Assembly (NCBI GenBank): GCA_964247055.1
Contig: OZ176050.1
Location: forward strand, 7,564,001 to 7,628,000
Direction: 5' to 3'
DNA from: Paragordius varius
Lineage: Eukaryota > Animalia > Nematomorpha
DNA length: 64,000 nt
Within the stretch, counting starts at the first letter, position 1. Every line of letters begins with the position of its first letter. The translations under genes were made by a program, and so were the position numbers. The notes under the pieces were generated by a model, which was not told the origin of the DNA, did no database searches, and saw only the letters and a program-made list of their open reading frames with translations. This document shows positions 6,705-44,550 of this stretch, piece by piece.

Positions 6705-6790
6705 ACTTCGTTTTTTTGATAAAAGGAAAATCTTTCATTAATTCATCGTTGAATTTACAACCTCTTTTTGGGATCATATTTATAAACTAC

Positions 6791-22039: not shown

Positions 22040-23755
22040 TCAATTTGAATCTTGTTTTTTCCATTCTACACATTTCGGACAACAATAAGGATAGAGAGCT
22101 GTACGATTCGTCTCTATTTTCTCACAATCGATTAACTTTGGTCCACATCTATTATTGTTATATAATTTTTTAGATTATTTTAGATGGCTAGTTGCATATT
22201 GTATGCAATAATTCCGTTTAGTTCAATTGATATTTTGTATATGAGTAAAATAATCATTTTTATATGCTAGAAAAGGATTCAAGTTAATCTTTTTATATTT
22301 ATATTAGTTAGTAGTTTTTTTTACTGGATAATTAAACAATAATCCAAATATTGGTTATTAGATTATATAAATTTTAAACGAAATAAATTTTAAACGTTTT
22401 TTGACTATAATCTAAACATTATATGATTATGTTTTAGTTAAAACCGAGTTTATTTAAGGTTGATGGATCAATCAATGTTAAATTTAAAGAACATTTAAGT
22501 TAATAAAGATACGTATATATGGTTAAAAGAGGATAAGTTTTGGGTCCACATTCGGCTCTTAAACAATCTGGTAGATATGCGGTCTCATTTGCGCCAATCG
22601 TCCAATTCAAATAATGACATTCAATGTCTATTAAAATTTAAATGTTTAACATTTACACTTGAAATTGACCCTCAAACGTAAATATATCCTTTCTTATGTT
22701 TTAATCAAATTATTAATTTTTAGCACAGTTTTTATTTTTTTCTGTTTTAACACATCCATCCAATTATATAGAAAAAGTGTTTTTTTGATTTAAAATACCA
22801 TAAAATAAATTTTGATAAATTTTGTCAGAAGAAAATTCAAGTAATATTTAGCTTATATTATAAATTGATTACGTTTTATATTAAAAATTATATCCACTCA
22901 GGTTTATGTGTATATATAAAGTGAGTAAGGAGTATTACGGGCTAGGATATAGGAGCGTGGGAATCCTTTCATAGGTTAATTTTATTTTTGTTTTTTAGCA
23001 ATAGAATTTAAAATAACATTTTCGCTATTGAAAATTTATCGGATAATTATTTAAAATAATAATTCATATTTTTAAAACAATTTATCTTATTTTATTCAAT
23101 CATAAAATATCATAAAAATAATGCTTGATTTTAAGAAAGAATTCAATCGCAAAATGAAATGATAGATATTAGAAAAATTGAAGAGTTTTAAAAATGATTT
23201 TTGTTTACGCCATTAATATAATTGGATTTACGAAACATAAAATATGACTTGTTGGTTGGTTGAATATTTTATGTTATAACATTAATACAAATACCATTTC
23301 TATGAAATATAGAATGTGTCCTCATTGTTCGCGACACTTTTTATTCATAATTAATTATGCCTAGTAAATTTCAATACTTTATATAAAAGAAAGTCAATCT
23401 TTAAAAATTTTCTGATTAATTCTAAAGAACCTCCACAGTCAATTCTAAAATTGGGTATGTTATAATAACCATTAAAGAATTAATCGGATTTTACAATTAT
23501 AATTATATACAATATGGCTAAAATATAAAAAAGTAAAAAAATTAACTAAAAGTCAATACTTCTGTTGTTGCTATTTGGCAATAATATATAACTTTCCAAC
23601 AATGTCTTTACAGTTTATTTGAATTAAACTTACTTTAAACATAAAAATGTAATTATACCATTCGAGCTAGGTTGAATACTAATCACTGCCATATTAACGC
23701 TCATTATTATGCAAAGGAATAATAACCAAGAATAGAGGATTGAGTTTGAATTCAT
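22040..23755 (-). CDS. Secreted single-VWC (SVWC-like) protein A, 106 aa, 8 Cys in the mature chain
   Basis: Exons 23755-23659, 22627-22513, 22148-22040 (intron phases 1 and 2). Protein MNSNSILYSWLLFLCIIMSVNMAVISIQPSSNDIECHYLNWTIGANETAYLPDCLRAECGPKTYPLLTIYTCGPKLIDCEKIETNRTALYPYCCPKCVEWKKQDSN*. Hydrophobic leader, C-x4-C and YPxCCPxC motifs. Confidence 0.85.
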
Positions 23756-24209
23756 TTTTTAATGAATGTGAATGATAATGAAAAAATAATAATGGATAAA
23801 AGGCAAGATATCATTTGGCTTAAATATCGCATAACTAACACGTGCGAAAGTTTTCGCATAATAATAACATCATAGATAGCAACAATAAACCCGCTTGTCA
23901 AAGAGTGACAGAAATGAGTCATGTAAATTTTATTTTAAACGGAAACGAATTCAACTTTACATAAGTTTTTTAATATTATATATAATATTTATATATATAA
24001 ATATATATCTATTATATATTTATAGTGCCCTAGGTTATTTTACTCTGGGTACATTCCATTGCGTTTTAATTGCGCTCAATGTTAATGTGATGAAATAAAA
24101 TTGTAAGAATGTGCAATAGTTACATTTTATTCTTAAACGTAGCAGTTTTGATTATATTTAAGCTTTCAAATCTTATTTCTTAAATTTATGATTTTAATAA
24201 TTATAGTTT

Positions 24210-26056
24210 CAGTGGTACTCAAACCGCGGCCCGCGGCCCGACTAAGAGTACTTTAAAATTGCCCTATGACCATATTGATACTTAAATTATTTTTTTTATT
24301 GATGAATTTTTAAAATACACATAAAAATTTTCGCTTATTTTAATATTATTTTCTTTGGATTTAATTTTGGCACAATTTGAGAAGTAAAATTCCCTACATT
24401 AAAGTGATTATAAAATTTTGGCACACGTTGTTTCTGTTTCTATGTTCTATTTTCTTTTCTATTTTGAAATTTTTATTTCATTCCTTTTTTGTATTTAAGC
24501 CAGCCTTTGAGTCAAACTTGCATATACCTATCTTTTCATGCTATCCTGCACCATTTTTTATAACTCATTCCCATAAAATGTTTTTCAAATCAACATCATT
24601 AAATTTCGACCTGTTTTTTTATAGCATAATTCAAATTGTATTCCTTTTTTAAAAAAAAATTACATAATATTTAAACATAATTCAAAGGATGACATCTAAT
24701 GCTAAAAAACGTAACTTATCCGATGAAAATGGCTCCTTTAAAAAGGAATTGGAATAAAAAAAATTGCCGTTTGCCTTATATGTAAGGACAACATAATAAA
24801 AAAATACATTGAAAGATATTTTTCAATCCATCATTCTCATAAATTACCAGAAAATCATGAGGAAAGAAACGAAATATATAAAAATAATACCAGAAAGAAA
24901 AATCTATTACCAGAAAAATGTTTTAACATTAGTATCGTATGAAATTTTCGCTATTTAGGAAAAAATTGAAACCGTTTTCTGATACCCAAATAAAAGAATC
25001 TTTAATAAATGGTTGCACTTTTTTATTTGATAAATTCCATAATGATCAAATAATGAGGCAAATTTGAAAAACTTCAACTTTCTGATTCAATATTTGCTCG
25101 ACGCATTGAAGATATATTTAATTATTTTTTTAACAATACGTTATTGTCTGTGAAAAACTGCAATTTCAAGTTTGTTATTGATTCTAGCGCTGATATTAGT
25201 TCAACACCCCAATGTGTGCTCTTTGTGAGATTTTGCAACGACATAATCAACGAGGAATATATAAAATTTTTACCAATGAATAATACCACTAAAGGAAGTG
25301 ATTTTCTTGTAATTGGCACTTTTTTTATAATAATGGTATATCTATGAAAAAAATGGTTTCCTGCAAAGATGGCTGGCCCTCTATGATTGAAATAAACATA
25401 GGATTTATTCCTCTTTTAAAAAGCAAATATAATTTGCAGAATATTTTATCCCCTCACTGCTTTATTCATCAGTAAAACTTGGTTTCGCCTGTAAAAGAAT
25501 CATTCAATTCAATAGTTAAAACGGTTTTGGATATAGTTAGCCACATCCGTGGCAGAGAATTCAACCGCCGTAAACTCGAAAACCTTCTGAAAGACATCCA
25601 CAGTGAGTTTGATATTATTTGTGCACCGCTGTGAGATGGCTAGGCCTTAGTAAAGTATTTATCTTTTATTTTAAGACATGAAATTTCATTATTTATAAAA
25701 GATAATAGAAAGCTTTACGAATGAAGTATGCCAAGAATACATGCAGAAATTGCTTAACTGATGATCATATGGACTACGTATTAGATTGGCCTGTCATGAG
25801 TCGAAACCAAATTTGTCAAAAATTGGTTAATATCAAAATAAATGTTATGAAATGTTTTAATTTTTTAAACTAAATGGTGTAAAAGGAATTAACTGGATTT
25901 ACATAAATGCGATCCGCAAAAAATATTGTGCTGATTTAGATAAATATGTGCATATATGTCAAATAGCTATGGAATATTTTCCATTATAAGGTTCATGGCC
26001 CTCTAAAAAAAAATATATTTTATTTGGCCCGTCAAATTTTTTGGTGAGTACCACTG
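24210..26056 (+). mobile_element. Decayed hAT transposon of the Buster/SPIN/Charlie (GTF2IRD2-like transposase) group
   Basis: Perfect 12-bp TIRs CAGTGGTACTCA / TGAGTACCACTG with GCGGCCCGC subterminal motifs. Fragmented transposase: MTSNAKKRNLSDEN...AVCLIC, FVIDSSADISSTPQCVLFVRF (LDESTD-type), NTTKGSDF, HCFIHQ, TAVRWL. No clear TSD. Confidence 0.85.
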
Positions 26057-26198
26057 GCTTAGCTTTTCGCCGGGTGCTTATATAATAAATTAATTATATT
26101 GTAAATATAATTATGTATATTTTAATCAACATTGATTATTAATTATCTGAGCTCAAAAAGCTATGGTATTGAAGAAGAAAGGAATAACCGATTTGGAA

Positions 26199-26244
<46 letters not shown>

Positions 26245-28387
26245 CAGTGATATCTGATGAATGTGGCAACGATAATTCCTCCTGCAACCCCATTATGCGT
26301 TCATACACTCAAAATTCACATAATTATCATAAAGGGCGATAAGCGGTCTAAGAATAATAATCGGTCCCATTAATTTATATATTAAAACCAAATCAACCAA
26401 ATAATTGAGCTTAAATGGTGTTAATAAAACTATTTGGCTTTCTTCATATTTTTCCTTGTTTTATATATAGCTTTTTGTTAAGTAATATACATTGGGAATT
26501 ACAATAAAGTAAGTATGTGATGTTACTCATTGTTTCAATTCCATTAGTTTTTTTTCCTGAAAACCGAAATATTATCTTTACCAGGATATATTGTCAATGC
26601 AAATTTATTACTATTAATGACCATGAGGTATATTCTTAGAAATTTCTTAAGCAAATGATATTTGGTATTGAAACATGCCTTGAATTGTAATAAAAGTATT
26701 TTGCACCCATATTTTGACAAATTCTTAAAATGATAGAAAGCTTTTACCATGAATTTGGGTATTACCGATTTTGGGTCAGTTTGTTTCTACAACGTTTTTG
26801 CTTTTATATCCATGACCTTTTAGAATACAAATAAAAGCCGTTCAAGTAAAATGAGTATATGAGACTGGGGCTTTGAAGCAGGGCCAAAAATGAACCGGAA
26901 CCAGGGTAATTATAGAGAGGTTGTAGGAGCGGGTTCTCAAAATTTGAAGTGAATGTAAATTTTTAGAGGTAAAATCGGGATAATTTTCGAAAATAATACC
27001 GAAACCGATAAAATTCGAAACTAGTTCTGACCATTATTCCTAAGTTGTTTCCAAATATTTTGCTTGTCTAGATAAAGATTAACTTTTACATATAATTTTT
27101 GCAAAAAATATATTGCCTCGATGCAAAAAACCTAATCAATCACCTACATTAACTATAATACCATTATTAAGCATTTATTTATGGAATTTAAAGCAATATA
27201 ATTTATTAGAAGAAATAAAAATGGGTAAATACCCCCAAAAATTTTAATACTTTACTCAAAAGATAATTTTAATGCATATCGTTCGTAAGGGGTTAAAAAT
27301 TAGTTGGTTATATATTATATATATATATATATAATATATACAAATTTGTTTACTCAGATTTTATCATGTAAAAATAGTCTTTACGGTAATAATTATCATT
27401 TTATCAATCCAAAAAAACATATAGACATAAACGTTAGAGACAACGAGAAATTTTTTGTTAAAAATGCAGGCTCTCATCAAAACTTATGGCAAAAATGTTT
27501 AAGTAAAAAAGAATGCATGAAAAATAATATCAGATAGAAGCAGATTTTTAAATTTGTAGAAATAAAAATTTCTTTTTTGTTGTTTTTTAATTTTCGATTA
27601 AATTATAGGTTAAAATTCAAAAATTTCTATTATAGCGATTAAAAATAATTTCTTAGACTTTTTAGCATAAAACATACCGATAACTGTAGATGAACAATCT
27701 ATTTTAAATATGTAATTAAACCGATATGGTTATTTGATTTGGAACAAATAGGGTAGGTTCTCAAAAATTTGAAGTGGCTTTTAAGAAAAAGGGACCAGAA
27801 CATACTATTCCAATCAGAGATCCGTATTATTGTTACGGTGGTTCCGGTAATCAAGTCCTGCAAAACACGGGTAAAAATTATCAATGATTTATTAAAATTT
27901 GGACAAAATCTTTTAACATTTATCTTATCCAAATATCTCAATTCATAAGTAGGGTTTTTTCGCATTCAATATGCCATTATCAAAGAGCTAAGGTTGATAG
28001 TTAAAAATAATATAGACTTACAAGTGCTTCGGATTCGTAAAAAGCTAACCAATGAAATATATATTACACCATGATTTCAGAATTTTGGGATGATTCGTTA
28101 AATTATAAAATAGGTTACGCATAAAAGAAATTCGAAATTACAAAATAAAATATCTAAATATACCATATCAAAACCTAGAAATATAGCAAAAAATCTTAAA
28201 ATTTTTTAATTGATGTCGTAACCATTCAATATAAACTAGAGTTTATAATTTGTTTGGGGCATTTTTTTATTAGTCGCTTATATGGCGTTACGTCCCTATT
28301 ATTTCGAATTTATGCCCAAAGTTTATCTAAAAAAATAGTCTTTTAAAAAGTACACGCTCAACCCCAAAAGTGTAACAATATCATACG

Positions 28388-30639
28388 TAAGGTGACCAGA
28401 TTTTTTGAAGGAAAAAGCGGGACAAATCTGAGAAAGGGGGGAGGGTTATGAGGTGGAGTGTACAACTAAAAATTTTTGTGCAAAAAATTTATTGTAGTAT
28501 TTGTTTAATTTTAACACAAATACATTATAAATATAAAAATTTAATTCCTTGGTATATTTTTTATTTAAGTGAATGCGTTTTAGCAGATTGTTATCATTTC
28601 ATAAAATATTGTAGGTCTTCACAAGAATTTGTCAAATTATATTTGACAGATAAAATGGTAAAGTGATAACATTTAAATTTGATTTTTCCGATGTCCACAT
28701 CTGATTTACTGTGGAAAAACGCGCTCAGTAGCAGCGTTGGTTCCACGTAAAGATAATGCAAATTCTACAATTAAAATATTGTATGGAACATAGTTTGTTT
28801 CAAAATTATAAATTCCAACCATTTCTTTCCTAGTGTATTTTTTTCTGTTCTCAATAATTTAAGTTTTTCATTATTATTATATTTTATAACTAATGATACT
28901 TTAGAAAAAAGATATTTTCTGAAAGGTTACTTTTTGGGAATTTTTGGGAGATTCAGAAATGATTTTTGAACATCGCACCAATTAAATTATGGTTTTAATG
29001 TTATCCAATGAAAATGATCAACTTCATTAAATTGCACCGTCCAGTCTTCCAATAATCTTTACAGTTTGTATAAAACATTTTTAATGGTACAGAATATCTT
29101 GGTGATTTATAAGCCTTGTTTTTCTAAATTATTTATAATATTGCGGATTGTTACTGGTGTAACTTCCTTGGCTACTTCGATTGCCGAAGTTTTGCATTTT
29201 GAAAGAGAGAAGCTTGATTATGTAGGAACTCTAACCATATTGAAGAATCACTTTTAAAATACTTTTCCAAAGTTGTAGGACATTTGTCCTGTGATAAAAA
29301 ATAGGATTTTAAAGGATCATTTTTTACAATTCCTTCGATAGCTGGCAGAAGAGCAAACCAACGAGTTTTACAATATCCATGCATATTTTAATATTGAACT
29401 TCTGCAATTGCACGGAATTTCTTAAGCGTTTCAACGCGTACCATGTACATAAAAATAGGAATATACCTTAACAACTACATTTTCCACATCTAGGGGTAAC
29501 AAATCAGCAGCTGTTTGAATAGCGTTGTGTGTTATATGCGCTACACACCCAACGTCAATAATGTTTTGATTAAGATTATCTGCTAATTAATAATTATTTT
29601 TTTCTCCACTCCTTGCTTTTCCACCGAAGTTCGTATTGGTGTTGTCACCGCAATATGCGATGATTTTGTCTTTTAAATTATTTTTTCCAATATTCATTAT
29701 TGAAGTAAAATTATGTCGGAATTCGCACCGGGTAGATAAATAAAATTTATTTTAATTTTACTCCGGTTTCTGGACCAAAATATTTTATTAACGTCGGAAA
29801 TAATTTTGTTTCCTGATTTGATACATCAGAGTATGGCGATATGAAATTAATTTTCAGCAAATCTTTTTGTATTCAGAAAATACATGTGGCGAAAGGACAT
29901 TCAATGGCTTCAACCTTTGTACGGGCACGAATAACATGTGAGGTACAATCCATAGATCTAAAGGAATGATTGTGATTAACGGCGTGAAAAGATAAAACGC
30001 TTTCGGCTAGTGCCAAATTCTTTTCTTCCTCAAAGCGGTTTTACGATAAAAATCGCTCATTTTGTAAGATGATGCCACCCTATCTTTTTTATGTTTCGGT
30101 GCTTCCATATGCTTTGTAATATCATGCTTACCGCCATGTGGTAGGGTGAACCCCTCACATAAAGCATTTAACAAATGATTCCTTCTTCGTTTTTTCGATA
30201 AAAGGAAATTCTTTCATTAAATCGTCGTTAAATTTACAACCTCTTTTTGTACTCATATTTTAAACTAATATTAATATAAAAAAATATTATATTACCTTAA
30301 TTTTCTGGAGTAAACGTATAAGCTACCGATTTGTGATATTAATTTGTCTTCTTGATAATGTTGGCAGTAGGATTAGGAAGTAAAGTGTATAATCATATGA
30401 TATAAATTTGAAAAAAATAAATATTTTTAATTTAAAAATAAAAAAATTTTTAAAATTGATATAGATTTTAAAGATAACTAATGATAAAAAATTTAAACGG
30501 ATAAAAAAATAAAATTTTTAATAAAAAATTTAAATGTATTTAAAAAATTATTTTATATAATCGTGAAAAAGCGGGACATTTCAAAAACGCAGCGGGACGC
30601 GGGACAAAGTGTGAAAAAGCGGGACGTCTGGTTACCTTA
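28388..30639 (-). mobile_element. hAT (Tip100-like) copy 2, 2252 bp, with decayed transposase
   Basis: Same TIRs as copy 1. Perfect 8-bp TSD ATCATACG at 28380-28387 and 30640-30647. Transposase fragment HGYCKTRWFALLPAIEGI...LKSYFLSQDKCP; colinear with copy 1. Confidence 0.93.
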
Positions 30640-30948
30640 ATCATACGCCTATAATTACTGTTGTATTTAGGTTAGTACAATTTGCCAACGTTAATCCCTT
30701 GATAGCCATTAATTTTATTGGAATATATCAATTTTGATGAAAACAATTTTAGTAAAAAAATATAAAAGCTGTTGTTTTTATCGTAATAACAGCAATATAA
30801 AATAAATCATTGGCGTAAAAAATTTGTTTTAATGAAATATTTATTGACAGATCTAAATATAAAACAAAGTATACAACACCTTGTAACAATATATAGAAAT
30901 AGCAGGATCAAGCATGAACAATTTCATTAACATTCAATCAATCACCTT

Positions 30949-32251
30949 TTAATTCCATTGTTTTTGTTGGGTAAATCTGGATCGTAATCTCTTGGATGTT
31001 CTCTTTCGACCCCGTTTTATATTTTTTACTTCATATTCTGCCGATAAATTTTGACTGTGTACATATACATTGGCAGTACTTTCAAGCGAATCAGTAGTTA
31101 TAGTACTGTAAGAAGAATGTTGCGGGACAAAAAATTTATTTGGACTATATTTTTTTGGCATGATATTAATGCGTGATTTAACAAAGGTTTTGGACGGTGA
31201 AACGTTAAACGAACTTTGAGGTTTGTTTTTCTTAGCATCAATGTTATTTATCTCCTCCTTTTGTTTGTTTAATAATAAATCTTTACAGTCCATGGAAAAA
31301 TTTTCATAGTATTTTTGCTTAATATTTGACGTGTTTTGATTTGTAAGAATGGTTAAATTCGTGAAGGTATCATTAACATTTTTTATTTTTTGCTCTAATG
31401 ATTCGAGCTCCGTTTTTAAAAGAATATCAGCTCTATGATCTCGACTATCTATCAATTCCATTAATTTTAAGTTAAAAATTGATGATATTTGACGTTGACT
31501 TTCTGAAAACTAAAATAAATGAGAAAAATACGAATTTGGAAATGTGAGTTAAGTATCGCTTTTCTTGCAAATTAAATTTTTCATCCATGTAATTAAATAA
31601 TCGTTCAATCAGGCCTGTTTTTTCAGTTTTTTGATTTTTTATATCCATAATTGCTGACATTATTTTGGTGCTTTTATCTTAAATGTTTATAAATTAAATA
31701 ACTTTGATCATGTTTATCAATTATGTGCTGTGTGTTTTTGATTTCACCCTACTACTATATTTTTTAATACTTTTATAGTATTAATTTCCTTTAAAATCTT
31801 TTCTTTATCATTATGATCTTCTTTAAAATATTTGTCGATATTAAAGTTAACTATTATTAGAGTTTATTTTACTTTCATTAATAAGCTTCTCGTTTTTAAT
31901 AAGATCTAATTTATGTTTTTCACAATCTTCAATATGATTTCTTATAAGATACTCAATATGATTTAATTTGTCCCTAAATTTTATTAGTAAATTATAACTT
32001 AATATCTTTGTCCCTTTGTCCCGAATAAAAGCGTTCAAATTTATCAAGTTTTTTATCGATTGATTGTGGAGGTTGTTGAGAGTTAGTTAAATACTTCCCA
32101 AAACCTTTATTGTTATCCTTTAATTAAATTTAATAACAACTGAATTTTTTGAGTAGGATTCCCAAGAATTTTGTGAATATCCTCTTTGCGAATAATCGCT
32201 TATCGAAGAGTTGGCATCTATTCCAGAATCTTGCGTACACTGACTCAACAT
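30949..32251 (-). CDS. Orphan coiled-coil protein, 387 aa, 7 exons separated only by 22-25-nt introns
   Basis: Exons 32251-32141, 32117-31999, 31973-31873, 31850-31771, 31748-31703, 31677-31532, 31509-30949. GT-AG introns of 23, 25, 22, 22, 25 and 22 nt join several short ORFs into one stop-free 1164-nt frame. S/Q-rich N-terminus, long K/E/L/I-rich helical middle, basic C-terminus KRGRKRTSKRLRSR. Confidence 0.8.
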
Positions 32252-32522
32252 ATTTATTTGTTTAGGCAGACAATTTTTACAGTTATCGTCTGCTTATTAC
32301 CATCAACATTGCCATGATTTATTTAATTTTTAGTTAATTATTAATATAACAAATTTTTTTCATAAGTTGGGACAAATACATATATATACAATTAAATATT
32401 GTGTTAAAATCTGTTTTTAGATAAATGTCTGGGAAATCATTAATTTGGTTTCGTATACAATCGATAATAATTATTGAAAATAAGCTTATGCTTTCAAAAT
32501 AGGTAAAAACACTTAACACGAA

Positions 32523-33862
32523 TCAAAGTGTTTTGTTAATTAATTGTGTGGCCAACTTTTTTGATTTACACGGGCAGCATTCTGGATAAGGAAGGGAATT
32601 GTTTTGTAACTTTTCAATATCATCAGTTTCACATATCCCACAACTAAAACGATGAATCAAATATACCGATATAAATAATATGGATTGTATTTAACTATAA
32701 ATATTATTTTCACAATAACCATTGTTTGTGATAAATATATGAATAAATCTGCACATTTTTTCGCACATCATTTTATTTCATTTTAGATTGTCAATTTAAC
32801 TTAAAAATGTGGATTTGTATAAAAACTTAATATATTTTAAATTCAATAAAGTGTGGTCATAATCAAAGGAAACCAGTTGTTTTTAAAAAATATTTGTGTT
32901 AAATATTGGAAAAAATCAATATATTTATATGAGACATTCAAAAAATCTGCATCTTTCAAATTCAAAAAGGGAAAATTTATATATATGGGGATTTTTAAAC
33001 AATATAAGTCCCTAAAGTCTTATCTTTGCGCCATTTTCAGAAAACGTGTGTGCCTTCAGATTCAATCATATACTTTTTAATTTTTCTTTAATGCGCCAAA
33101 AGTCGATCTACTTTTTGATTTAGCCCCAATAGCCGCTCCTTCACAAAATGACTTCTTTAAAATAACAAGTCCCCAAAAATTTTTAAAGTAATTTTTGTCC
33201 CAATTTATGAGTCTGTATAAAATAAATAATAGTTTAAGGCACTGGCTGCATAAAGGGAAATATTTAGCTAACATCTATTTATTAGTGACTGAGTACCATT
33301 TTAAAATACACTACCATATAAAATAGCTTTGAAGGGGCAAAACCTAGGGGAGAAAAGCGATTGATTAACGGCTTTAGTTATTTTTCAAAAAAATGCCAAA
33401 ATTCAAAATATTATTGCTAGATGTTAAATTTACCTATTTATATGAATCGAAATAACATCCTCATCTAGGCTGCAATGAGCTTCAACACAATTATCAACGA
33501 CGGTTTCATTTATTGGGATAGGTTTCGTAAATAGCTCGCTTTGGCATGAGGTGACATTTGCTAAAATAATATGTAACAGATTTTAGTGTATAAACTACAT
33601 TTGTCATATATAAGGGTAAAATTGTGGAAACCTTTACTTTAGAATGTAAATAGCGAATTAAATTATGATACAAAAAAATAAATGCATGAATATTGAGTAT
33701 TAAGCGTGTTTTGGCTAAATGATACCCCAAATTTACAATAGAAATTTTGCATTGATACTTACCTGAAACCGAATCAATTAGTTTATATTTTTCATAAAAT
33801 GTTGCCGCAGATAGTAAATTATATAATAATACATTTAAAATTATGAAATATGGAAATTTCAT
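32523..33862 (-). CDS. Secreted single-VWC (SVWC-like) protein B, 115 aa, 8 Cys
   Basis: Exons 33862-33763, 33560-33434, 32643-32523 (phases 1 and 2). Protein MKFPYFIILNVLLYNLLSAATFYEKYKLIDSVSANVTSCQSELFTKPIPINETVVDNCVEAHCSLDEDVISIHINSCGICETDDIEKLQNNSLPYPECCPCKSKKLATQLINKTL*. Confidence 0.85.
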
Positions 33863-36319: not shown

Positions 36320-37330
36320 CGTCCAAAATCGGGGTATGAAAAAAAACCTGATGTATATATTCTGATAGGAAAATGTATCAGGATTATTATGGTGTTTTGT
36401 TTTTGGATTTTACGAGTGAATAAGAAATATTTACGTGCTCCACACCAGTAAATGGAAAAATCTGCGAACATTTTGTAAACTAAGGCTTCATTTTATGAAT
36501 GTCACTAAAATATATCAGACTCCATATAAAAAACAAAACAAAATTTAAAATAATTTATAGATGTAAGGTCCAAAAGCTCCAATCTTTTGTGCTTATCTAA
36601 ATTAGGCTAAATCGCAAAAATGCTGGGATTGTATAATATAAATTTAAAATATATACCAAATTTTGATATCAAATAATATTTATATTTGAAAATTTAAGCA
36701 AAGTTTTGTTGAAGGGTGATTCAGACTATTATGAGTAATGATGGAAACGGTTTTAAAACACTTTAAGATATCATAAAAACAGTTTTAATATATATCTTCT
36801 AATACAGAATATTTCTAGCACCTCAAAGTTTGGGATAAAGCATTCGTTCTTCATAAAAATTTATGTAAACATTGTGTTTTTACATAAATCAAATTTTTTT
36901 TAGCAAATAAACATTTAAATTAAACTTAGATAGAAATGATTATACCGTTTCCATCATGCCTCAAAATAGTATTAAGGTTTAATAAAATTTTGTTAACCCT
37001 AAATTTCTCAAAAAAAATATCCATTTTTTAAGAAAAAATAAAATATTTTTATTGATATATAAATCTAGATATAATTAAAAAATCACATTCCGGAATTCTT
37101 TCTTTTATTTAAAGAGAACTTCCTACATTTGATAACAAAATAATTTATTATCGGAGCCCACATCTAAAAATTATAATTATAGAAAATATTATTTCGCTTT
37201 TTATATGTAGTCTATCATATTTTAGTGATTATATTTAAAATTAGGCCTCTGGCTTTCACCAAATATTTTTAAAAATTTTTCTATTTCCTGATATGAGGTT
37301 CTTTTAAAAATGATGGTAAATATCACTGGC
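36320..37330. mobile_element. Long-TIR MITE family copy
   Basis: Left arm TCCGTCCAAAATCGGGG...CCTGATGTATATATTCTGATAGG, shared internal blocks, right-arm GCTTTCACCAAAT. Further partial copies at about 35535, 39380-39530, 47100-47290 and 56200-56890. Confidence 0.55.
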
Positions 37331-37994
37331 AAAGGCCGAAATTGATAACACCAACATAATCCTGTTACATTATCTATTATATTAAATTCAGCTTAAACAT
37401 TAGATACTTTTAGAACGTTGAAACTTATTTGGGAAAAAACAATTCCAAAGGCTAACTGAGTGTTAAACAAATATTTTTTGTGGATAAAAGCGTAATTTCT
37501 AAAAATATATTGAAAAAATTTTGTGGAGCATATATGTAGCTAAAGTCGTGGTCGATTTTTAGCTTTTGGTAGGTAAAGATTGGTAAATTTTCTCTGCTGT
37601 AGTTGCTTCAGAAAAACTTTTCTTGGTATAATTTGGTTTATAAATTTTTTAACGCGCAATCTCCGCCTTTTCGCTTTTTGTTTACGAGAACCTGCCGATT
37701 TCTGACGAGTCCAAAAATTTGAGACTTTCGGAATAAGCACTTAAATCTTTGCAATATAATAATGTTTTACATGTAGTTTATGGTTTATTTTAGTTATATT
37801 TAGCGTAAAGCTCAGCTCAAAACCTTTATTTAATGGGCAAATTTTGACATTTTCTGATATGGAACTGTTATTACAAAAATAATAATAACTATCTTATATT
37901 GTTGTAAGGGAGAAATTCAAAAACAGTGTGATAATCCTAATACTCTCCATCAATATAATATATTTCATCAGGAAATTTTTTTGGGCACTGAGTT

Positions 37995-39166
37995 ATGATA
38001 TATTTTATTTTGACACATTTTTCACTCCCTACAACAATAAACACATGTTTATTTTATTTAAATTTTTAAAAATATTTTTTAACTTTTGTTTTTTTATTTA
38101 CTTTTTAGCTTTGCACTATTATTATTCTGTATTGTATAATATAAAAGAATTATGGGAGGCCCCTAAACTCGCTAAGATAACGACAAAGAATAAAAACATT
38201 GTTATAACTGGGGCTACCACTGGCATTGGATTAGAAACTGTAAAACAATTATGTCGACCAAATTACAAAATTATTATTGGTTCAAATATATACGGAGAAG
38301 TGGAATTACTTTTAAAGAAGTCACATTCTATTATTTTTGAACATTTGAATTTAGAAGATTCTCAATCTATATTTAACTTTGTTGATAAAGTTGTAGAATG
38401 TTTTGATGATGTTGATATTATATATAATAATGCCGGCGTCGCATTATATCCCAATTATTCTGATGAAAAAATAGTTACCATAAGTGATATAAAGATAAGT
38501 GATGCAACTTTCATTATAAATTTTTTGGGTCATACACTTTTAACTCTTTATTTGTTATACAGAATCAGGGTAAAAAAGCCAGATAAATATCAATTTACCC
38601 CAATAAGAATCATTAATACATCATCCGTTTTGCATAAAATAGCATGGCTTGATTTATTTAATCTAGATGCATCTACCTATTACTCTCCGCATGCTTTTTA
38701 CGGTCGCTCGAAACTTGCTGTTACAACCTGGACCAAAGCTCTTACGAAAGCTTTTCAGAATTCAAACAGCTACAAATCAATATGTTTATACTCATTTCAT
38801 CCTGGTATTGTTTATAATGAAAGATTGTACGCTCTTTTCCACCCCTTAATTGTTAAAACCGTTATTATAATTCATAAACTTGGACTTTTAAAAACCAATT
38901 TCCGAGCTAGTCAAAATTTATTGTATCTCGGATTCGACGAAATTACAGTTCCGAAATTGCCCGGTGCTTATTTTGAAAATATGGAGCCTGTTAAGCCTAA
39001 TAAATGTGCATTAGATATCCAAAGTCAATATGAAGTTCTGAAATTAACGGTAGATTATGCCAAACAATGTTATCGAATTCACAAAAATACGATTTATGAC
39101 GAAAATGGGCTAACCTTTGATGCCTTTTTGGATGATATTTTTAAAAATTTTCTGTTAAATCCTTAG
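37995..39166 (+). CDS. DHRSX: Short-chain dehydrogenase/reductase, DHRSX-like (RDH11-14/DHRSX group)
   Basis: TGATTGIG Rossmann motif, NNAG, NFLGH, NTSS, catalytic YGRSK within YSPHAFYGRSKLA (human DHRSX has YSPHAAYAQSKLA), HPG. Probable start ATG 37995 with intron 38047-38108; a possible in-frame 21-nt intron at 38474-38494. Orthology is from recalled similarity only. Confidence 0.75.
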
Positions 39167-39784
39167 GTATTTTATGGATTTAATATCATGCATTTATGGA
39201 ATTGTATAAAACCACATTTCTTATTTGCACATATTTAATACCCTATTTATTTCACTATTTTTTTAGGCTGTTCTTTGGAAAATTTCATGTATAGCTTTTT
39301 AAATAAATTAATAAACCGTATTTTCATCTTATCTACAGTGCGATGAAATATAATTTTGATATCACTGCTATTGGGAGTAACCAGAAAAGTGATTTCTTTT
39401 TAAAATGTTCGGAAGCCCCAAAACCAAAAGTACCTTAAAATTACTGTTATATACCTCTATCAGAATATACATTTTATTTGGATATTATTAAAGCCATTTC
39501 TATCAGAATATATTTTTAACCGGTTGTTTATCACCGTTTTGTACACTGTTAGGCAAGGGGTGTATGTCCAAAATGATAAAAATAATGCATAACAGTAAAT
39601 ATATAAAAAGAGTGACTCTTAATGAGACTGTATTATAGCGTTGATTTAGTATACATTTTGTACTTATTTTTTACCTCAAAATGATAAGGTATTTAAATAA
39701 GACATAATTTAAGAATAATTAAAGAGTGTTGAAAATAAACCGTAAATAAAATTAATTTTTTATACATATAATCAAAATTGAATA

Positions 39785-41955
39785 TTAATACGAATATTCA
39801 TAATAATAGTAATCGTAGTTGCTGCCTTGCCCTGTTTTGTTATCGGCTTTGTCAGGGAGATAATCTCCGCTAGAAAAAACATTTTTATTGTCCGTTTTTG
39901 GGACAGGAGTTGTTGATTCAGAAACACATGTCGGACAACATTTTGGATAAGGGTCTGAGGTGGTTTGTTTAATGGTTCCCGGTGGACATGCTATGACCCC
40001 GCATCTTATAAAATATAATTACTTATTTGATCGCTAAATTTTTTATTCATATATTAATTTCTAGCTAGTTTTTTCATAAGTTCATAAAATTTTGTAAAAA
40101 TCCTTTACCAATATTCTACAAGCTCTAATTTTTTGGCTATTATAGAAAAATTAATCACTTAACATAATATTAATTTTTACAGAGAAAATTTATTGAAGAA
40201 AATGTTTGGGATGTTTTATACCCTGGATATCTCGATATTATATTGAGGTAATTTTTTTCTTACCATTATTTAACAACTTAAATTCCCTCACGAATCAAAA
40301 CAAGCTGTTTAGAATTTTAAAATATTATCGATTTGACGGCAATAATGAAATGTATAAAAGTACACATATTATTAACCTGTCTCCGAAATCGGGCGATATA
40401 AAAAATAACCTGATAATATATATTCTGATAGGAATTTCCTGTTTATCTGGTGCTTTTGGTTTTGACTACTAGTGATAGAAAGTTATCACTTTTGTAGTAA
40501 CTGCTCCATACAGAAAATGGCAAAATTTCCACATATTTTTTATATTTTTTTTGTGAAAGCTAAATGCTTCATACCAAAAATTAACACTAAAATATATCAT
40601 AAACTACTTGTAAAAAGCAAAAAAATATTCTAAAAAAATTTAATTCTTAGATGTAAGCTTCAAAAGTCCCAAATATTTTCGTTCTTCTAAAGTGGGCTAG
40701 TTCTTTTAAAATAATCGCAAAAATGCCGGGATTGCGCGATAAAAACTTTAAAAATTGAAAAAATACCTACGTTTTACAAAAATTTAATTTTTAGCAAAAT
40801 TTTGTTGAAGCCTACTTCATACTATTTTTAGGCGTGGTAGAAAAGGTATAAAAACGCTTTTAGATATTATAAAAACACTTTTTCATAATTTGATGATGCT
40901 ACTATCGCTTCAGAATATTAATTAGAAGGTTTACTTTTAAATTTTGGTGAATTTTTTTAAATTTAGCATTTAAATTTTTTATAGCGTAATCCCGGTTTTG
41001 TGTTTATTTTAAGAAAATCCGCCTTTTTTAAAAAAGCGATGCTCACATCTAAAAATTAAAAATGATTTATTATTTTTTGGTAGAAAGCATATAGCTTTCA
41101 CCAAAAAAATTATTAAAATGTGCCCAAATTTTGCCATTTTCTGATATGGAACACTTACCAGTGCAGATAGGTTTCTTATATCACTTATAGAACCAAAACC
41201 AAAAGCACCATAATTATCCTGATACATTTTCAAATCACAATTTATATCTTAACAAGTTATTTTTTTGTGGACACTGTGTAATTAATCATATATTCTTGCA
41301 TATTTTAGGATTTTGAATAAAAACCAAAAATATTTGGCAAATATGTCTGACCAGGATTATATGACGTGTTTTTTTGATTATCACACTTGAAAACCCGTTT
41401 TAATTTTTAAATTATAGTCACTTTATAAAATAATGCTTATTAATTTATAAGGTAGTCAACCACCCAAAATATTGAAATAAAAAAAATTTGAGGATATCTA
41501 TAAATTCGGTTGCGAGATATAAATATAGGTGGTTCACAGAAGAAGAAACTTCTGAATTTTATAGTGAAGGATTAAAGTAGGTTTATAAAAAATTTTGCAT
41601 ATTTTGTCCATATTTTAGAAGAAATCATTTAAAATTGCTCTAATAAATATTTGATTTTGATAAAAGTTTTAAGCGGAATTTAAAAATAAAATTAACCCTT
41701 CGCATTCTCCCATCAAATGAGTTTCATTGAGCCGCTTGCAACTGCATTCTCCACATGGTGATTGGATTAGACCCTTTTCTCCAGGAGATAATGCGATTTT
41801 GTAAGTCGGATTAAAATCACACTCTTAAGAGTTAAATATATATTATGCTTACTTGATCCTGAATATATGCCCATCGATACCCAACCAAATGTCCCATTAA
41901 TATACGCCAATAAAACACAAGGTAAAAGTATGGTAAGTCGTGATGGAAATAACAT
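39785..41955 (-). CDS. Secreted single-VWC protein C, 149 aa, 10 Cys plus a Tyr-rich acidic tail
   Basis: Exons 41955-41853, 41823-41697, 40004-39785 (introns 29 nt phase 1, 1692 nt phase 2). Protein MLFPSRLTILLPCVLLAYINGTFGWVSMGIYSGSKCDFNPTYKIALSPGEKGLIQSPCGECSCKRLNETHLMGECEGCGVIACPPGTIKQTTSDPYPKCCPTCVSESTTPVPKTDNKNVFSSGDYLPDKADNKTGQGSNYDYYYYEYSY*. Confidence 0.87.
40380..41240. mobile_element. Long-TIR MITE family copy inside intron 2 of SVWC gene C
   Basis: The left arm (TCCGAAATCGGG...CCTGATAATATATATTCTGATAGG...GGTGCTTTTGGTTTTG...GTGAAAGCTAAATGC) is mirrored over roughly 200 bp by the right arm (ATAGCTTTCACCAAAA...CCAAAACCAAAAGCACC...CCTGATAC). Confidence 0.7.
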
Positions 41956-42370
41956 TTTACGTTATGATATAGTTAATTTAAATTAATGATTAAATTTTTA
42001 TATCATACGTTGTTTAATTCATTACGTTTTATTTTTCGTTTCAACAAAATTGGATCAAACTGATATTAACTAGTCTCGCCTATTGTTATTGGCAATGGTT
42101 ACACAAGCCTTAAAGCTATTATAAAAGTGATCGAAACAGACATTTAAGACAATTAGCGAATCACATCAAATATTTGCTTTATAATTTCCCTCAAGCAAGT
42201 TTTCCTGACTTTGTTAGAAATAACCTGTTTGTATTCATAAAATATTATATGATCTCATGACTATTTGAATAAAGATAGTCATAAATTTTTATATAGATTT
42301 TTTAAAATTCGATACTACACATTATATATATATATAATTGTGAAATATTTATTGATATGCATATCATTCT

Positions 42371-44550
42371 TTAACAGGGTCGACAGCATTCGGGGTAAAC
42401 ACCACTTGTTGATACACATTGATTCAAATTACATCTATTATAAAGGATATATGAATAATTAACAATGTCAATTTTCGAGACCAGCTTGTACATTTTGAAA
42501 AACTTATTCTTTAGACAGTGTGAAGCAATATCTTTGGTTTTAAAGCCATATAAAAGAAATAAAATGCGAAAAACGAAATGAGGAAAATAGCTAATCATAT
42601 TTAACATATAAGTTCATGCAAAGTATGAGCAAAAATGCATTGCAAGTTTTTACATTAAATTTATAGTAGAGACAAATATTATTGGCGCATAGTCGCTTTT
42701 TCTAGCTATGCTGATAATATGATGAAAAACTATGTATTTAATCATGCTGTACAATGAAAAGTACTTAGTTTTATCTCTTGAGGTTTTACTAAAAAAATTA
42801 AAAGTAAAGTTTTGTGGAAGTTTTCGCTACGTTTGGTATATTTGGCGTAATTTATACTAGTTTCATTTTTTTTAAAAAAATATAAGTAATTATTGGTATT
42901 TTAAATCTTAAAATACAATGAATTTCCACTAAGTATATGTAGTAAAAATATGAAATGGATTCGATTTTGATAATATTTATAATCTGAAATGTTTTTTTAA
43001 TTTAAAATTTTGAGACAAAAATTTTTATATATCTTCTAAATCCAAAGATATCTTAGCTACTGCATATATATTGCCAAAATAGTGAGAATCAGCTTTTTGG
43101 ATCATTTATTTATTGTACTTATGTTTCTAATTTAATGACATCAAATATTTTTTAAATTTTGAAATCCCAAATGCTATAAACATTATAAGCCACTTAGAAA
43201 GGTTAATACTTTTATACACTACAGTTATTTAAAGTACGTTTATTAATTTTTAAATAATTCTTATTTGTTCTAAATTATATAAATCTGAAAAGATAGATTT
43301 TTAATTGGCATATTTTTTTTCGCATTTTAATTGCTTATGCGAATGTAACCGCTTCGTCTGAAATGCACATCTTGTGTTATTTAATATATTTTTGCACTCA
43401 TTTAATTTATTTTAAATTAATCAATTTTCCATCCTTGAATTCCCCTTTTTAACTTAAAGTCAATTAAAAAACAAATTGATGATAAATCATTAGTAAACTA
43501 CATGATCATTAGCTAAATAATCTTTAACAGTTTTCTAAGCTGATAATCAAAATAGCACGACCGTTTATAATAATCATCTCTGAGAACCATCTAATTTAAA
43601 GCCGGACTAAAGCAGTTAACCAGTTCCGGTTCTGATTGTTAAGCAGTCCTTTTTAACGAGAATATGCCAGGATCTGGTTTTTGATACTTGGTCCCTGAGA
43701 TATCAATAAAGTCAATTAAAAAATAAATTGATGATAAATCATAAGTAAACTACATGATCATTAGCTAAATAATCTTTAACAGTTTTCTAAGCTGATAATC
43801 AAAATAGCACGACCGTTTATAATAATCATCTCTGAGAACCATCTAATTTAAAGCCGGACTAAAGCAGTTAACCAGTTCCGGTTCTGATTGTTAAGCAGTC
43901 CTTTTATACGAGAATATCCCAGGATCTGGTTTTTGATACCTGGTCCCTGATTTGATATCAATGTATATATATGAATTTTAAAATAATTTGTATCTAACAA
44001 CATATTTACCCAAGGCATTCCAACGTCACATAATCCGTTATATATTTGCAAATACATTTTGTGCAATCAAAATATATTGTTTGATTTACTTTGATACTGA
44101 TGTTATTTTCTGGTACTAAGCAATCTATTTAACAGAAAATGCACAATTCACAAATTCAAAAATAAATTTAATATTTTATTTTATTCTAAACTTAAACAAA
44201 GCAATGAAACGTTAGAAGTATCTTTTTCTTTTTGACAAATTATTTGATACAAAATAATATATTTATTTAATTTTATCAAATATACCACTAGCAATGTAAC
44301 ATTTTTATCAATCCATTTTATATAAATGTGTTAAAAAAATTAAGTTTTATTTATTGGTATAGCATAAATTAATATGTGACTAATTGATAATTTCTAAAAC
44401 TTATATTTTTAGAGTAAACTTGAATTTAACAAGAATTAATATTATACCTGGTATCAGGATATTCGTTATATTATGGATTGGATGAATCGAATAGTTTATG
44501 ATACTGTAATAGCTATTAAATGCAAAAATAATTAGAAAAAATATATTCAT
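42371..44550 (-). CDS. Secreted single-VWC protein D, 93 aa, 10 Cys
   Basis: Exons 44550-44448, 44124-44010, 42434-42371 (phases 1 and 2; exon 1 is 103 nt as in gene C, exon 2 is 115 nt as in gene A). Protein MNIFFLIIFAFNSYYSIINYSIHPIHNITNILIPDCLVPENNISIKVNQTIYFDCTKCICKYITDYVTLECLGCNLNQCVSTSGVYPECCRPC*. Confidence 0.83.
43456..43962. repeat. Near-identical tandem duplication of a 252-bp unit in intron 2 of SVWC gene D
   Basis: The unit AAAGTCAATTAAAAAA...GGTCCCTGAGATATCAAT (43456-43707) is repeated at 43708-43962 with only a handful of differences. Confidence 0.95.

What the first reader, a model, noticed from the sequence alone, without database searches (positions are those of the whole stretch)
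22040..44550. Cluster of four co-oriented secreted single-VWC (SVWC-like) genes hidden from the ORF track
Seen: four minus-strand genes (23755-22040, 33862-32523, 41955-39785, 44550-42371) share one architecture. Exon 1 is a signal peptide of 97-103 nt, followed by a phase-1 intron. Exon 2 is 115 or 127 nt with C...C-x4-C, followed by a phase-2 intron just before a Cys. Exon 3 carries YPxCC(x1-2)C. Outside the Cys scaffold they are barely alignable, yet all frames are intact, and each has several N-glycosylation sequons; an N-E/Q-T sequon just before the second Cys is shared by A, B and D. Known: single-domain VWC proteins (Pfam SVWC; Drosophila Vago, scorpion La1, tick salivary proteins, snail granularin) act as cytokine-like, immune or venom components. 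Inference: this is a rapidly diversifying, lineage-specific family of secreted effectors. If the organism is a parasite, these are candidate host-modulating or invasion proteins, and automated annotation has probably missed them.
Basis: partly seen in the sequence, partly recalled or inferred. Interest (0 to 1): 0.82.

Follow-up and report, generated by a model that had tools for sequence, protein, structure and literature searches.

The report
Hidden secreted single-VWC gene family
Four small three-exon genes in this AT-rich, hairworm-like genome very probably encode secreted, disulfide-rich proteins made of one von Willebrand type C domain. The family is known mainly from arthropods, and neither expression nor function could be tested here.

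Summary
All four minus-strand models reproduce exactly: exon sizes 97-103 / 115-127 / 64-220 nt, GT-AG introns, phases 1 and 2.

- **Chance:** the exon-3 motif [YF]PxCCx(1-2)C occurs four times in the window against 0.01 expected.
- **Family:** exon 3 of A, B and C, and of two further paralogs, hits only Pfam SVWC (C-terminal half, E 0.018-0.1). Ten control Cys-rich open frames gave no such hit.
- **Fold:** the exon-2 model matches fibronectin-I and VWF C4/C6 modules best. The exon-3 model matches only tick CirpT1 in the PDB, and an arthropod SVWC cluster ranks first in the ESM Atlas.
- **More members:** I found three paralogs elsewhere in the genome (E and G on contig 7, F on contig 4) with the same phase-2 intron just before a Cys.
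C and D (and E-G) are 10-12-Cys canonical VWC types with CxxCxC. Only A and B are 8-Cys SVWC types, and they lack C3 and C5 together.

Not shown: expression. No relatives were found in other species.

The parasite-effector idea stays speculative. Verdict: real, a new member of a known kind, moderate interest. Earlier notes s1-326769 and s1-261389 may be further members; I did not check them.

The parts
23659..23755 (-). Gene A exon 1 (97 nt): ATG plus signal-peptide-like hydrophobic N-terminus; phase-1 donor GTATAA
   Evidence: joint hydrophobicity and uncharged-run percentile 0.011 of null ATG ORFs
22513..22627 (-). Gene A exon 2 (115 nt): VWC subdomain 1, C1...C2-x4-C4, NET sequon; 8-Cys type (no C3, no C5)
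22040..22148 (-). Gene A exon 3 (109 nt including stop): VWC subdomain 2, C-x6-C...YPYCCPKC
   Evidence: (Pfam SVWC positions 42-64 of 66, E 0.053)
33763..33862 (-). Gene B exon 1 (100 nt): signal-peptide-like N-terminus, donor GTAAGT, phase 1
33434..33560 (-). Gene B exon 2 (127 nt): C1...C2-x4-C4, NET sequon; 8-Cys type
32523..32643 (-). Gene B exon 3 (121 nt including stop): YPECCPC
   Evidence: Pfam SVWC E 0.1; own-genome SVWC scan hit
41853..41955 (-). Gene C exon 1 (103 nt): signal-peptide-like N-terminus, donor GTAAGC, phase 1
41824..41852 (-). Gene C intron 1: 29-nt GT-AG micro-intron. It is needed to keep C1 and the family's C1-C2 spacing.
   Evidence: the alternative acceptor gives an 82-nt exon without C1; C1-C2 spacing 21, within the family's range; earlier notes on 20-32-nt introns in this genome
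41697..41823 (-). Gene C exon 2 (127 nt): VWC subdomain 1 with C1, C2xxC3xC4 and C5
   Evidence: AlphaFold model pLDDT 68.6: beta-hairpin plus three-stranded sheet. Best structural matches are FnI modules (Z 4.1) and VWF C4/C6 (Z 3.4).
39785..40004 (-). Gene C exon 3 (220 nt including stop): VWC subdomain 2 (C6-x4-C7...YPKCCPTC) plus a 46-aa low-complexity, Tyr-rich tail
   Evidence: (SVWC E 0.04). Model pLDDT 79.6. The only PDB matches are CirpT1. The top Atlas match is an arthropod SVWC cluster, TM 0.63.
44448..44550 (-). Gene D exon 1 (103 nt): signal-peptide-like N-terminus, donor GTATAA, phase 1
44010..44124 (-). Gene D exon 2 (115 nt): C1, NQT sequon, C2xxC3xC4, C5
42371..42434 (-). Gene D exon 3 (64 nt including stop): C6-x4-C7...YPECCRPC, with the stop directly after the last Cys

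Best explanation
**What it is.** Genes A-D are four separately transcribed three-exon genes. They belong to a dispersed family of at least seven members, in a genome whose closest database relative is a horsehair worm. [quoted passage not shown]

**How it is built.**
- Exon 1 supplies the ER signal peptide.
- Exon 2 supplies VWC subdomain 1, a beta-hairpin plus a three-stranded sheet that resembles a fibronectin type I module.
- Exon 3 supplies the flat, disulfide-stapled subdomain 2, which ends in YPxCCxxC.
- C and D keep all ten canonical cysteines. A and B have lost C3 and C5 together, which gives the eight-Cys pattern typical of arthropod SVWC proteins.

**How it most likely works (inferred, not shown).** After secretion, with N-glycosylation at the conserved sequon before C2, the proteins act as soluble binding modules for extracellular protein or microbial ligands. 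Documented SVWC-type proteins work this way: Vago-like cytokines, MdSVWC1 as a pattern-recognition receptor, and tick CirpT1, which clamps complement C5 mainly through its C-terminal subdomain.

**My split for the biological role:**
- the worm's own immune or extracellular signalling, about 50%;
- host-directed secreted effector, about 30%;
- something else, about 20%.
For: **Shown.**
- The exon-intron architecture is exact and conserved in four window genes and three paralogs elsewhere.
- The motif is enriched 4 against 0.01 expected.
- The Cys spacing in the 10-Cys members is strictly regular: [n,2,1,10-12,2,4-7,9-15,0,2].
- C3 and C5 are present together in five members and absent together in two. 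Two extra Cys are gained together in E and G.
- Pfam SVWC is the only recurrent family hit: 5 of 7 exon-3 peptides, E 0.018-0.1, always the C-terminal half of the profile. None of 10 control Cys-rich open frames hit it.
- The PDB sequence search returns only tick CirpT1, and not significantly.
- The exon-2 model is all-beta. Its top matches are FnI modules and VWF C4/C6, with CirpT1 and CCN3 VWC lower in the list.
- The exon-3 model matches only CirpT1 in the PDB (TM 0.63-0.65, rmsd 2.2-2.4 Å). Its top ESM Atlas match is an arthropod PF15430 cluster (TM 0.63, rmsd 1.9 Å), and a BMPER VWC cluster is also listed.
- The exon-1 peptides look like signal peptides, and exon GC exceeds intron GC.

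**From the literature.**
- SVWC proteins are a signal peptide plus one VWC domain with 8 Cys, against 10 in canonical VWC. The published consensus ends X-P-X-C-C-(1,5)-C (PMC11515477).
- Shrimp Vago genes have three exons, with the ATG in exon 1 and the stop in exon 3 (PMC11226982).
- CirpT1 has a VWC-like fold and binds C5 (PMC6955305).
- VWC has SD1 and SD2 subdomains held by ten Cys (PMC10326224).
Against: - There is no RNA evidence.
- The putative RNA runs of the same species label hold next to none of the words of the C+D stretch.
- No homolog was found in 1.84 billion representative proteins or by word search. The probe was only a ~30-residue profile.
- Every Pfam hit is below the gathering score (13-16 bits against 27). 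Exon 2 alone hits no family.
- All structural scores are individually non-significant, as expected for 32-41-residue models.
- Signal peptides were judged by a home-made hydrophobicity test, not by SignalP.
- Gene A misses the published fly spacing consensus by one residue. Gene B misses it at two spacings.
Confidence: 0.77

Rival explanations
1. The loci are unexpressed relics: dead or dying copies of a once-functional VWC family that still look intact.
For: No RNA support was obtained. Putative RNA runs of the same species label hold 0.00 of the sampled words of the C+D stretch. No annotated or transcript-derived protein with these exons exists in the large protein library.
Against: Seven copies have diverged to 19-34% identity, yet all keep open frames, every scaffold Cys, GT-AG sites and both intron phases. 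Cys are lost or gained only in pairs. That pattern requires long-term purifying selection. The RNA runs are few, their kind is only guessed, and their life stage is unknown.
Confidence: 0.1
2. The units are not separate genes. They are VWC-repeat exons of one or two large co-oriented multi-VWC genes of the chordin, kielin or BMPER type.
For: All four units lie on the same strand within 22.5 kb. Multi-VWC proteins exist, and a BMPER cluster appears among the structural matches.
Against: Each unit starts with its own ATG and hydrophobic exon, and each ends in a stop 0-46 codons after the last Cys. Unrelated genes lie between the units: an SDR on the plus strand at 37928-39166, and a minus-strand ORF at 30949-31461 that an earlier unchecked note reads as part of a coiled-coil gene spanning 30949-32251. 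Solitary members with the same terminal stop occur on contigs 4 and 7.
Confidence: 0.04
3. They are real secreted Cys-rich genes of a different fold (TIL, antistasin, FnI-only or a novel knot) that merely share a CC-x-x-C ending with VWC.
For: Exon 2 gives no Pfam hit. Its model scores slightly higher against FnI modules (Z 4.1) than against VWF C domains (Z 3.4). All scores are weak.
Against: FnI-likeness of VWC subdomain 1 is expected (my recollection of the collagen IIA VWC structure paper, not checked here). The full 10-Cys signature is present: C1, C2xxC3xC4, C5, C6, C7, C8C9xxC10. Three independent searches with exon 3 return only SVWC-type proteins at the top.
Confidence: 0.04
4. The family was acquired by horizontal transfer of an SVWC gene from an arthropod host.
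For: SVWC is reported as predominantly arthropod with a few molluscs (PMC11515477). Hairworms develop inside arthropods. The three-exon layout is the same as in shrimp Vago genes (PMC11226982).
Against: Composition and introns are native, including a 29-nt micro-intron of the class typical for this genome. No arthropod protein was similar enough to be found. Most members keep the ancestral 10-Cys form, which arthropod SVWCs lack. The paralogs are dispersed and deeply diverged.
Confidence: 0.04

Closest known systems
Arthropod SVWC proteins (Pfam PF15430: Drosophila Vago, Musca MdSVWC1, shrimp Vagos)
   Same: - Small secreted proteins: a signal peptide plus one VWC domain and nothing else.
- The same C-terminal X-P-X-C-C-x-C motif.
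- A and B have the 8-Cys pattern with C-x4-C.
- Three-exon genes of 1-3 kb.
- Tandem or loose clustering.
- Exon 3 hits the PF15430 profile, and the top Atlas structural match is a PF15430 cluster.
   Different: - Five of the seven members keep 10-12 Cys (canonical VWC, CxxCxC).
- Sequence similarity to arthropod members is too low for any database hit.
- The organism is a hairworm relative, a phylum not listed among the 407 species with SVWC genes in PMC11515477.
- Cytokine or pattern-recognition function was not tested.
Tick 8.9 kDa / CirpT family (PDB 6RPT, 6RQJ)
   Same: - It is the only PDB match, by both sequence and Foldseek, for the exon-3 subdomain (YPxCCP; TM 0.63-0.65, 35-36% identity over about 30 residues).
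- It is a parasite-secreted, disulfide-rich, two-subdomain VWC-like protein.
   Different: - CirpT1 has an enlarged N-terminal beta-sandwich.
- CirpT1 ends ...CCPKxxC with different spacing.
- Its target, vertebrate complement C5, has no obvious counterpart in an insect host.
- All matches are statistically non-significant.
Canonical VWC / chordin-like cysteine-rich repeats (Pfam PF00093; VWF C domains, CCN3, collagen IIA, crossveinless-2/BMPER)
   Same: - C, D, E, F and G show the ten-Cys signature with CxxCxC and CCxxC.
- The exon-2 model has the SD1 topology (hairpin plus three-stranded sheet) and aligns to VWF C4/C6 (Z 3.4).
- The intron falls at the SD1/SD2 boundary.
   Different: - Here the domain stands alone behind a signal peptide, instead of repeating inside a large matrix or BMP-regulating protein.
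- The C5-C6 spacing is 2 residues.
- There was no PF00093 hit at exon level.
Snail granularin and scorpion La1-like peptides (other single-VWC secreted proteins)
   Same: A single VWC domain behind a signal peptide, used in immunity or venom. This shows that the format occurs outside insects.
   Different: They are known to me only from the literature (granularin is cited in PMC11515477).

Membership tests
SVWC (Pfam PF15430; single-domain VWC proteins) | N-terminal secretion signal peptide | tested here: met
   This is a heuristic only; SignalP was not available. All four exon-1 peptides have a hydrophobic core and an uncharged run of at least 21 residues. They fall in the joint top 1.1-3.2% of 283 null ATG ORFs from the same window.
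SVWC (Pfam PF15430; single-domain VWC proteins) | One VWC-type domain and no other domain; mature size about 65-163 aa (PMC11515477) | tested here: met
   The spliced products are 93-149 aa (local script). No other recurrent Pfam family appears on any exon. Only C carries a 46-aa low-complexity tail.
SVWC (Pfam PF15430; single-domain VWC proteins) | Eight-Cys consensus C-(18,23)-C-(4)-C-(10,16)-C-(6,23)-C-(8,13)-X-P-X-C-C-(1,5)-C | tested here: inconclusive
   A has 8 Cys with all spacings in range except C1-C2 (17 against 18-23). B has 8 Cys with two spacings out of range. C and F match the expression but carry 10 Cys. D, E and G do not match it strictly.
SVWC (Pfam PF15430; single-domain VWC proteins) | Profile HMM score at or above the gathering cut-off (27 bits) on the whole protein | not testable with these tools
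   Exon 3 alone gives 13.3-15.7 bits on profile positions 37-66 for A, B, C, E and F. Exon 2 alone gives nothing.
SVWC (Pfam PF15430; single-domain VWC proteins) | SVWC/VWC subdomain-2 fold | tested here: met
   The evidence is weak but specific. For the exon-3 model (pLDDT 79.6), the only Foldseek PDB matches are CirpT1. The first Atlas row is an arthropod PF15430 cluster, TM 0.63 and rmsd 1.9 Å over 30 residues. VIA-align found nothing with Z of 2 or more.
Canonical VWC (Pfam PF00093) | Ten cysteines with C2-x2-C3-x-C4 and C8-C9-x2-C10 | tested here: met
   Met for C and D, and for E, F and G outside the window. Not met for A and B, which lack C3 and C5.
Canonical VWC (Pfam PF00093) | Subdomain-1 fold: beta-hairpin plus three-stranded antiparallel sheet (PMC10326224) | tested here: met
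   The exon-2 model of C has strands at 2-3, 9-10, 16-18, 25-30 and 36-40. The nine best of 48,161 chains are FnI modules or VWF C4/C6, Z 4.1-2.8. The Z values are low in absolute terms.
Canonical VWC (Pfam PF00093) | Profile HMM match to PF00093 | tested here: not met
   No PF00093 hit appeared at E of 10 or less for any exon peptide. The whole protein was not testable.
Vago-type antiviral cytokine / SVWC pattern-recognition receptor (function) | Infection-inducible expression, receptor or microbe binding, and JAK-STAT or Toll activation | not testable with these tools
   No expression or binding data are available. This is a functional analogy only.

The most novel reading that the evidence does not exclude
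The hairworm secretes these single-VWC proteins into its arthropod host as mimics or antagonists of the host's own SVWC/Vago-type cytokines and pattern-recognition proteins. They would damp or redirect host immunity during the months-long parasitic phase. This would parallel how tick SVWC-like CirpT proteins neutralise host complement.
Probability: 0.12. Interest if true: 0.8.

Novelty: new member of a known kind. Interest (0 to 1): 0.42.

Why it matters
- **Wider range for the family.** This would extend the single-VWC (SVWC) secreted-protein family, so far described as essentially arthropod with a few molluscs, to a nematomorph-like lineage.
- **A transition caught in one family.** One family holds both the ancestral 10-Cys VWC form and the derived 8-Cys form, which lost one Cys pair. 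That is a small natural experiment on how SVWC arose from VWC.
- **Annotation.** Short-exon, Cys-rich secreted genes are invisible to ORF tracks and probably to standard annotation in this genome. One of them depends on a 29-nt micro-intron.
- **Candidates for parasite biology.** If the proteins are expressed in the parasitic stage, they are concrete, testable candidates for host-parasite interface molecules. The secretome of hairworms is almost unknown.

Tried and rejected
1. **RNA evidence.** The look-up of sequencing runs listed only DNA-like holders. The putative RNA runs X6-X10 held 0.00 of the words of 39400-45200. Nothing was laid.
2. **Large protein searches.** The profile of exon 3 (A3) against 1.84 billion representatives gave one spurious repeat protein, P0001. 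The word search with A3 gave nothing. The ESM Atlas feature search with exon 3 of C gave no usable hit.
3. **Synteny.**
   - The SDR gene between B and C has no close homolog; the best hit is 28% to a sponge DHRSX-like protein.
   - The RPL15 ortholog in Gordionus was fetched with 10-kb flanks. It holds no CC-x-C or CxxCxC open frame.
4. **PDB with the exon-2 profile.** No hit.
5. **VIA-align with the exon-3 model.** No Z of 2 or more.
6. **Further pattern scans of the genome.**
   - The B-type motif gave only chance-like hits.
   - PxCCPxC gave one unrelated Cys-rich frame on contig 6.
7. **Exon 1 of paralogs E, F and G.** It could not be fixed. Several candidates exist.
8. I did not submit joined (spliced) proteins to Pfam, structure prediction or any search. 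The joined sequences were built only inside local scripts, for lengths, Cys spacing and hydrophobicity.
9. **Intron position in fly MdSVWC1.** Its exons of 209 + 139 bp imply a phase-2 intron at nearly the same CDS position as in gene A (212 nt). I could not check this against its sequence, because no supplement is held.
10. **Chance explanation.** Rejected on the motif statistics.


Full report
**1. Observation**

The window is AT-rich animal DNA, with GC 0.23-0.32. The four minus-strand models reproduce exactly.

| Gene | Exon 1 | Exon 2 | Exon 3 |
|---|---|---|---|
| A | 23755-23659 | 22627-22513 | 22148-22040 |
| B | 33862-33763 | 33560-33434 | 32643-32523 |
| C | 41955-41853 | 41823-41697 | 40004-39785 |
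| D | 44550-44448 | 44124-44010 | 42434-42371 |

- All eight introns are GT-AG. Intron 1 is phase 1. Intron 2 is phase 2, and it ends one base before a Cys codon.
- Intron 1 of C is only 29 nt. The next acceptor would give an 82-nt exon that lacks the first Cys.
- Earlier notes on this genome describe a class of 20-32-nt introns near gene starts. The family-wide C1-C2 spacing favours the 29-nt model.

**2. More than chance**

- The motif [YF]PxCCx1-2C occurs four times in the six-frame translation of the window. All four are on the minus strand at the claimed exon 3. The mean in 200 second-order Markov simulations is 0.01.
- Exons 2 and 3 have GC 0.30-0.43, against 0.17-0.26 for their introns.
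- The exon-1 peptides lie in the top 1-3% of 283 null ATG-initiated open frames of the window for hydrophobic core plus uncharged run.
  - About four such frames occur per 2 kb of strand, so finding one upstream of all four units by chance is unlikely.
  - This is a home-made test, not SignalP.

**3. What family**

Exon-by-exon Pfam scans put only one family on these peptides repeatedly. That family is SVWC (PF15430), and the match is always to its C-terminal half.

| Exon 3 of | E-value |
|---|---|
| A | 0.053 |
| B | 0.1 |
| C | 0.04 |
| E | 0.018 |
| F | 0.021 |

- These hits score 13-16 bits, against a 27-bit cut-off for the whole domain.
- Ten other open frames of the window with at least 4 Cys gave no SVWC hit.
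- A six-frame scan of the whole 110.5-Mb assembly with PF15430 returned just three places: exon 3 of C, exon 3 of B, and a locus on contig 7.

**4. Further members**

The contig-7 locus (E) has the same layout: exon 2 of 103 nt, then a phase-2 intron just before a Cys, then exon 3 ending FPNCCPKC.

A genome-wide scan with the back-translated motif gave 14 matches against 6 for the reversed control. Reading their frames showed two more genuine members:
- F on contig 4;
- G on contig 7.

Each has a CxxCxC exon followed by a phase-2 intron just before a Cys. Exon 1 of E, F and G could not be fixed. The family therefore has at least seven members, of which four form this loose cluster. Unrelated genes are interspersed in the cluster:
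- the SDR gene at 37928-39166 (+);

**5. Cysteine logic**

Joined only inside a local script, the domains have these Cys spacings.

| Members | Cys count | Spacings |
|---|---|---|
| C, D, F | 10 | [18-22, 2, 1, 10-11, 2, 4-7, 9-15, 0, 2] |
| E, G | 12 | the same, plus two extra Cys at the same two places |
| A | 8 | [17, 4, 12, 6, 13, 0, 2] |
| B | 8 | [18, 4, 13, 2, 17, 0, 1] |

- C, D, E, F and G carry the canonical VWC signature: C1, C2xxC3xC4, C5, C6, C7, C8C9xxC10.
- A and B lack C3 and C5, and only those two.
- From my own knowledge of the collagen IIA and crossveinless-2 VWC structures, C3 pairs with C5. I did not verify this in a paper here. If so, A and B lost one whole disulfide.
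- The literature states that arthropod SVWC has eight Cys where VWC has ten, and gives the consensus C-(18,23)-C-(4)-C-(10,16)-C-(6,23)-C-(8,13)-X-P-X-C-C-(1,5)-C (PMC11515477). A misses it by one residue in one spacing. B misses two spacings. C and F satisfy the expression.
- Paralogs have diverged to 19-34% identity, and Cys are lost or gained only in pairs. This argues for proteins that fold and have been under selection, not for decaying DNA.

**6. Fold, exon by exon**

*Exon 2 of C, with the seven-member alignment*
- The model has pLDDT 68.6 and is all-beta, with a hairpin plus a three-stranded sheet. This is the topology described for VWC subdomain 1 (PMC10326224).
- Foldseek found nothing significant; fibronectin type I modules ranked first.
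- VIA-align against 48,161 chains ranked FnI modules first (Z 4.1, rmsd 1.8 Å, 38 residues), then VWF C4 and C6 (Z 3.4). CirpT1 (Z 2.6) and CCN3 VWC (Z 2.1) came further down.

*Exon 3 of C, first 32 residues*
- The model has pLDDT 79.6 and almost no regular secondary structure.
- VIA-align found nothing.
- Foldseek returned only two of 350,542 chains, both tick CirpT1 (TM 0.63-0.65, rmsd 2.2-2.4 Å, 35-36% identity, E 2.5-2.9).
- The ESM Atlas shape search put an arthropod cluster carrying PF15430 first (TM 0.63, rmsd 1.9 Å, 30 residues). A BMPER cluster carrying PF00093 was also listed.

The profile search of the PDB by sequence likewise returned only CirpT1, at E 0.43. CirpT1 is a tick salivary protein with a VWC-like fold. 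It binds complement C5 mainly through its C-terminal subdomain (PMC6955305).

Each score is weak, as it must be for 32-41 residues. The agreement of HMM, PDB and Atlas on SVWC-type proteins is the argument.

**7. Organism and relatives**

- The RPL15 exon at 48361-48792 is most similar (83%) to RPL15 of Gordionus sp. m RMFG-2023, a horsehair worm. This agrees with earlier notes that the genome is hairworm-like.
- The window's other genes are ordinary animal genes: PITPNM/rdgB, SDR, carnitine acyltransferase and an EF-hand sensor.
- No relative of the VWC genes was found outside this genome:
  - profile search of 1.84 billion proteins;
  - word search;
  - Atlas feature search;
  - the Gordionus RPL15 neighbourhood.
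- The probe was a ~30-residue profile, and nematomorph genomes could not be searched as DNA. This absence is therefore weak evidence.
[quoted passage not shown] My paper searches found none that mentions both SVWC-type terms and hairworms.

**8. Gene structure compared**

- Shrimp Vago genes have three exons, with the ATG in exon 1 and the stop in exon 3, and span 1.8-2.8 kb (PMC11226982). This is the same layout and size as here.
- Fly MdSVWC1 has exons of 209 + 139 bp. That implies a phase-2 intron at a CDS position close to that of gene A (97 + 115 = 212 nt).
- This could reflect a shared ancient intron, but I could not place it on the fly sequence.

**9. What was not shown**

- **Expression.** I sent nothing from those places to any search tool afterwards. 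Putative RNA runs of the species hold next to none of the C+D words. That is weak evidence against expression in those unknown samples.
- **Whole-protein tests.** hmmscan, SignalP and structure prediction on the spliced proteins were left out, because joined models have no reference.
- **Selection.** No dN/dS or polymorphism test was possible.

**10. Mechanism and verdict**

- *Shown:* a conserved three-exon family that encodes signal-like N-termini and a single Cys scaffold of VWC/SVWC type.
- *Inferred:* secretion, N-glycosylation at the sequon before C2 (present in five of seven members), a two-subdomain fold with 4-6 disulfides, and action as soluble binders of extracellular ligands.
- *Speculative:* whether the target is the worm's own, as with arthropod SVWC cytokine or pattern-recognition roles, or the host's, as with tick CirpT.

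The 'rapidly diversifying parasite effector' reading is untested. I classify the finding as a new member of a known kind and rate its interest as moderate.

Noticed in passing
window 41824-41852 (-): Intron 1 of gene C is a 29-nt GT-AG micro-intron. Only this splice keeps the first Cys and the family's C1-C2 spacing. It adds a lineage-specific, non-housekeeping gene to the micro-intron class noted elsewhere in this genome.
   Followed up: partly
L002 (G000:C7:6842234-6845326, minus strand), L029 (G000:C7:1661742-1664765), L022 (G000:C4:858246-861269): Three further family members (E, G, F) lie outside the window with the same phase-2 intron before a Cys. E and G share two extra Cys, giving 12 in all. 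Their exon 1 is unresolved.
   Followed up: partly
window 37928-39166 (+): A single-exon short-chain dehydrogenase (adh_short, E 7e-18) has a long hydrophobic N-terminal extension. Its best database relative is only 28% identical (a sponge DHRSX-like protein), so it is an unusually isolated SDR.
   Followed up: partly
window 12956-19428 (+): Exons of a PITPNM/rdgB-type gene: the end of the PI-transfer domain, then DDHD and LNS2 domains.
   Followed up: partly
window 48361-48795 (+), 49714-50124 (-), 61357-61797 (+): An RPL15 exon (83% identical to Gordionus RPL15, the best hit of all), a carnitine/choline acyltransferase exon, and an EF-hand protein exon (my reading: NCS-1/frequenin-like). These confirm an ordinary animal gene neighbourhood.
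   Followed up: partly
window 4906-5040 vs 28409-28663, and 6583-6738 vs 30068-30175 (+): Pairs of similar Cys-containing open frames recur about 23.5 kb apart in the same order. This suggests two copies of a repeat or transposable element.
   Followed up: no
L050 (G000:C7:1658700-1662300), offsets about 2323 and 3342: Two near-identical copies, about 1 kb apart, of an ATG-initiated open frame upstream of paralog G. This looks like a local repeat.
   Followed up: no
L048 (G000:C6:7632850-7635870, minus strand, offset about 1485): An open frame with CNGPDCCPTCC continues without a nearby stop. It is a Cys-rich sequence and not obviously of this family.
   Followed up: no
Nothing was laid, and I did not use these letters again.
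   Followed up: no
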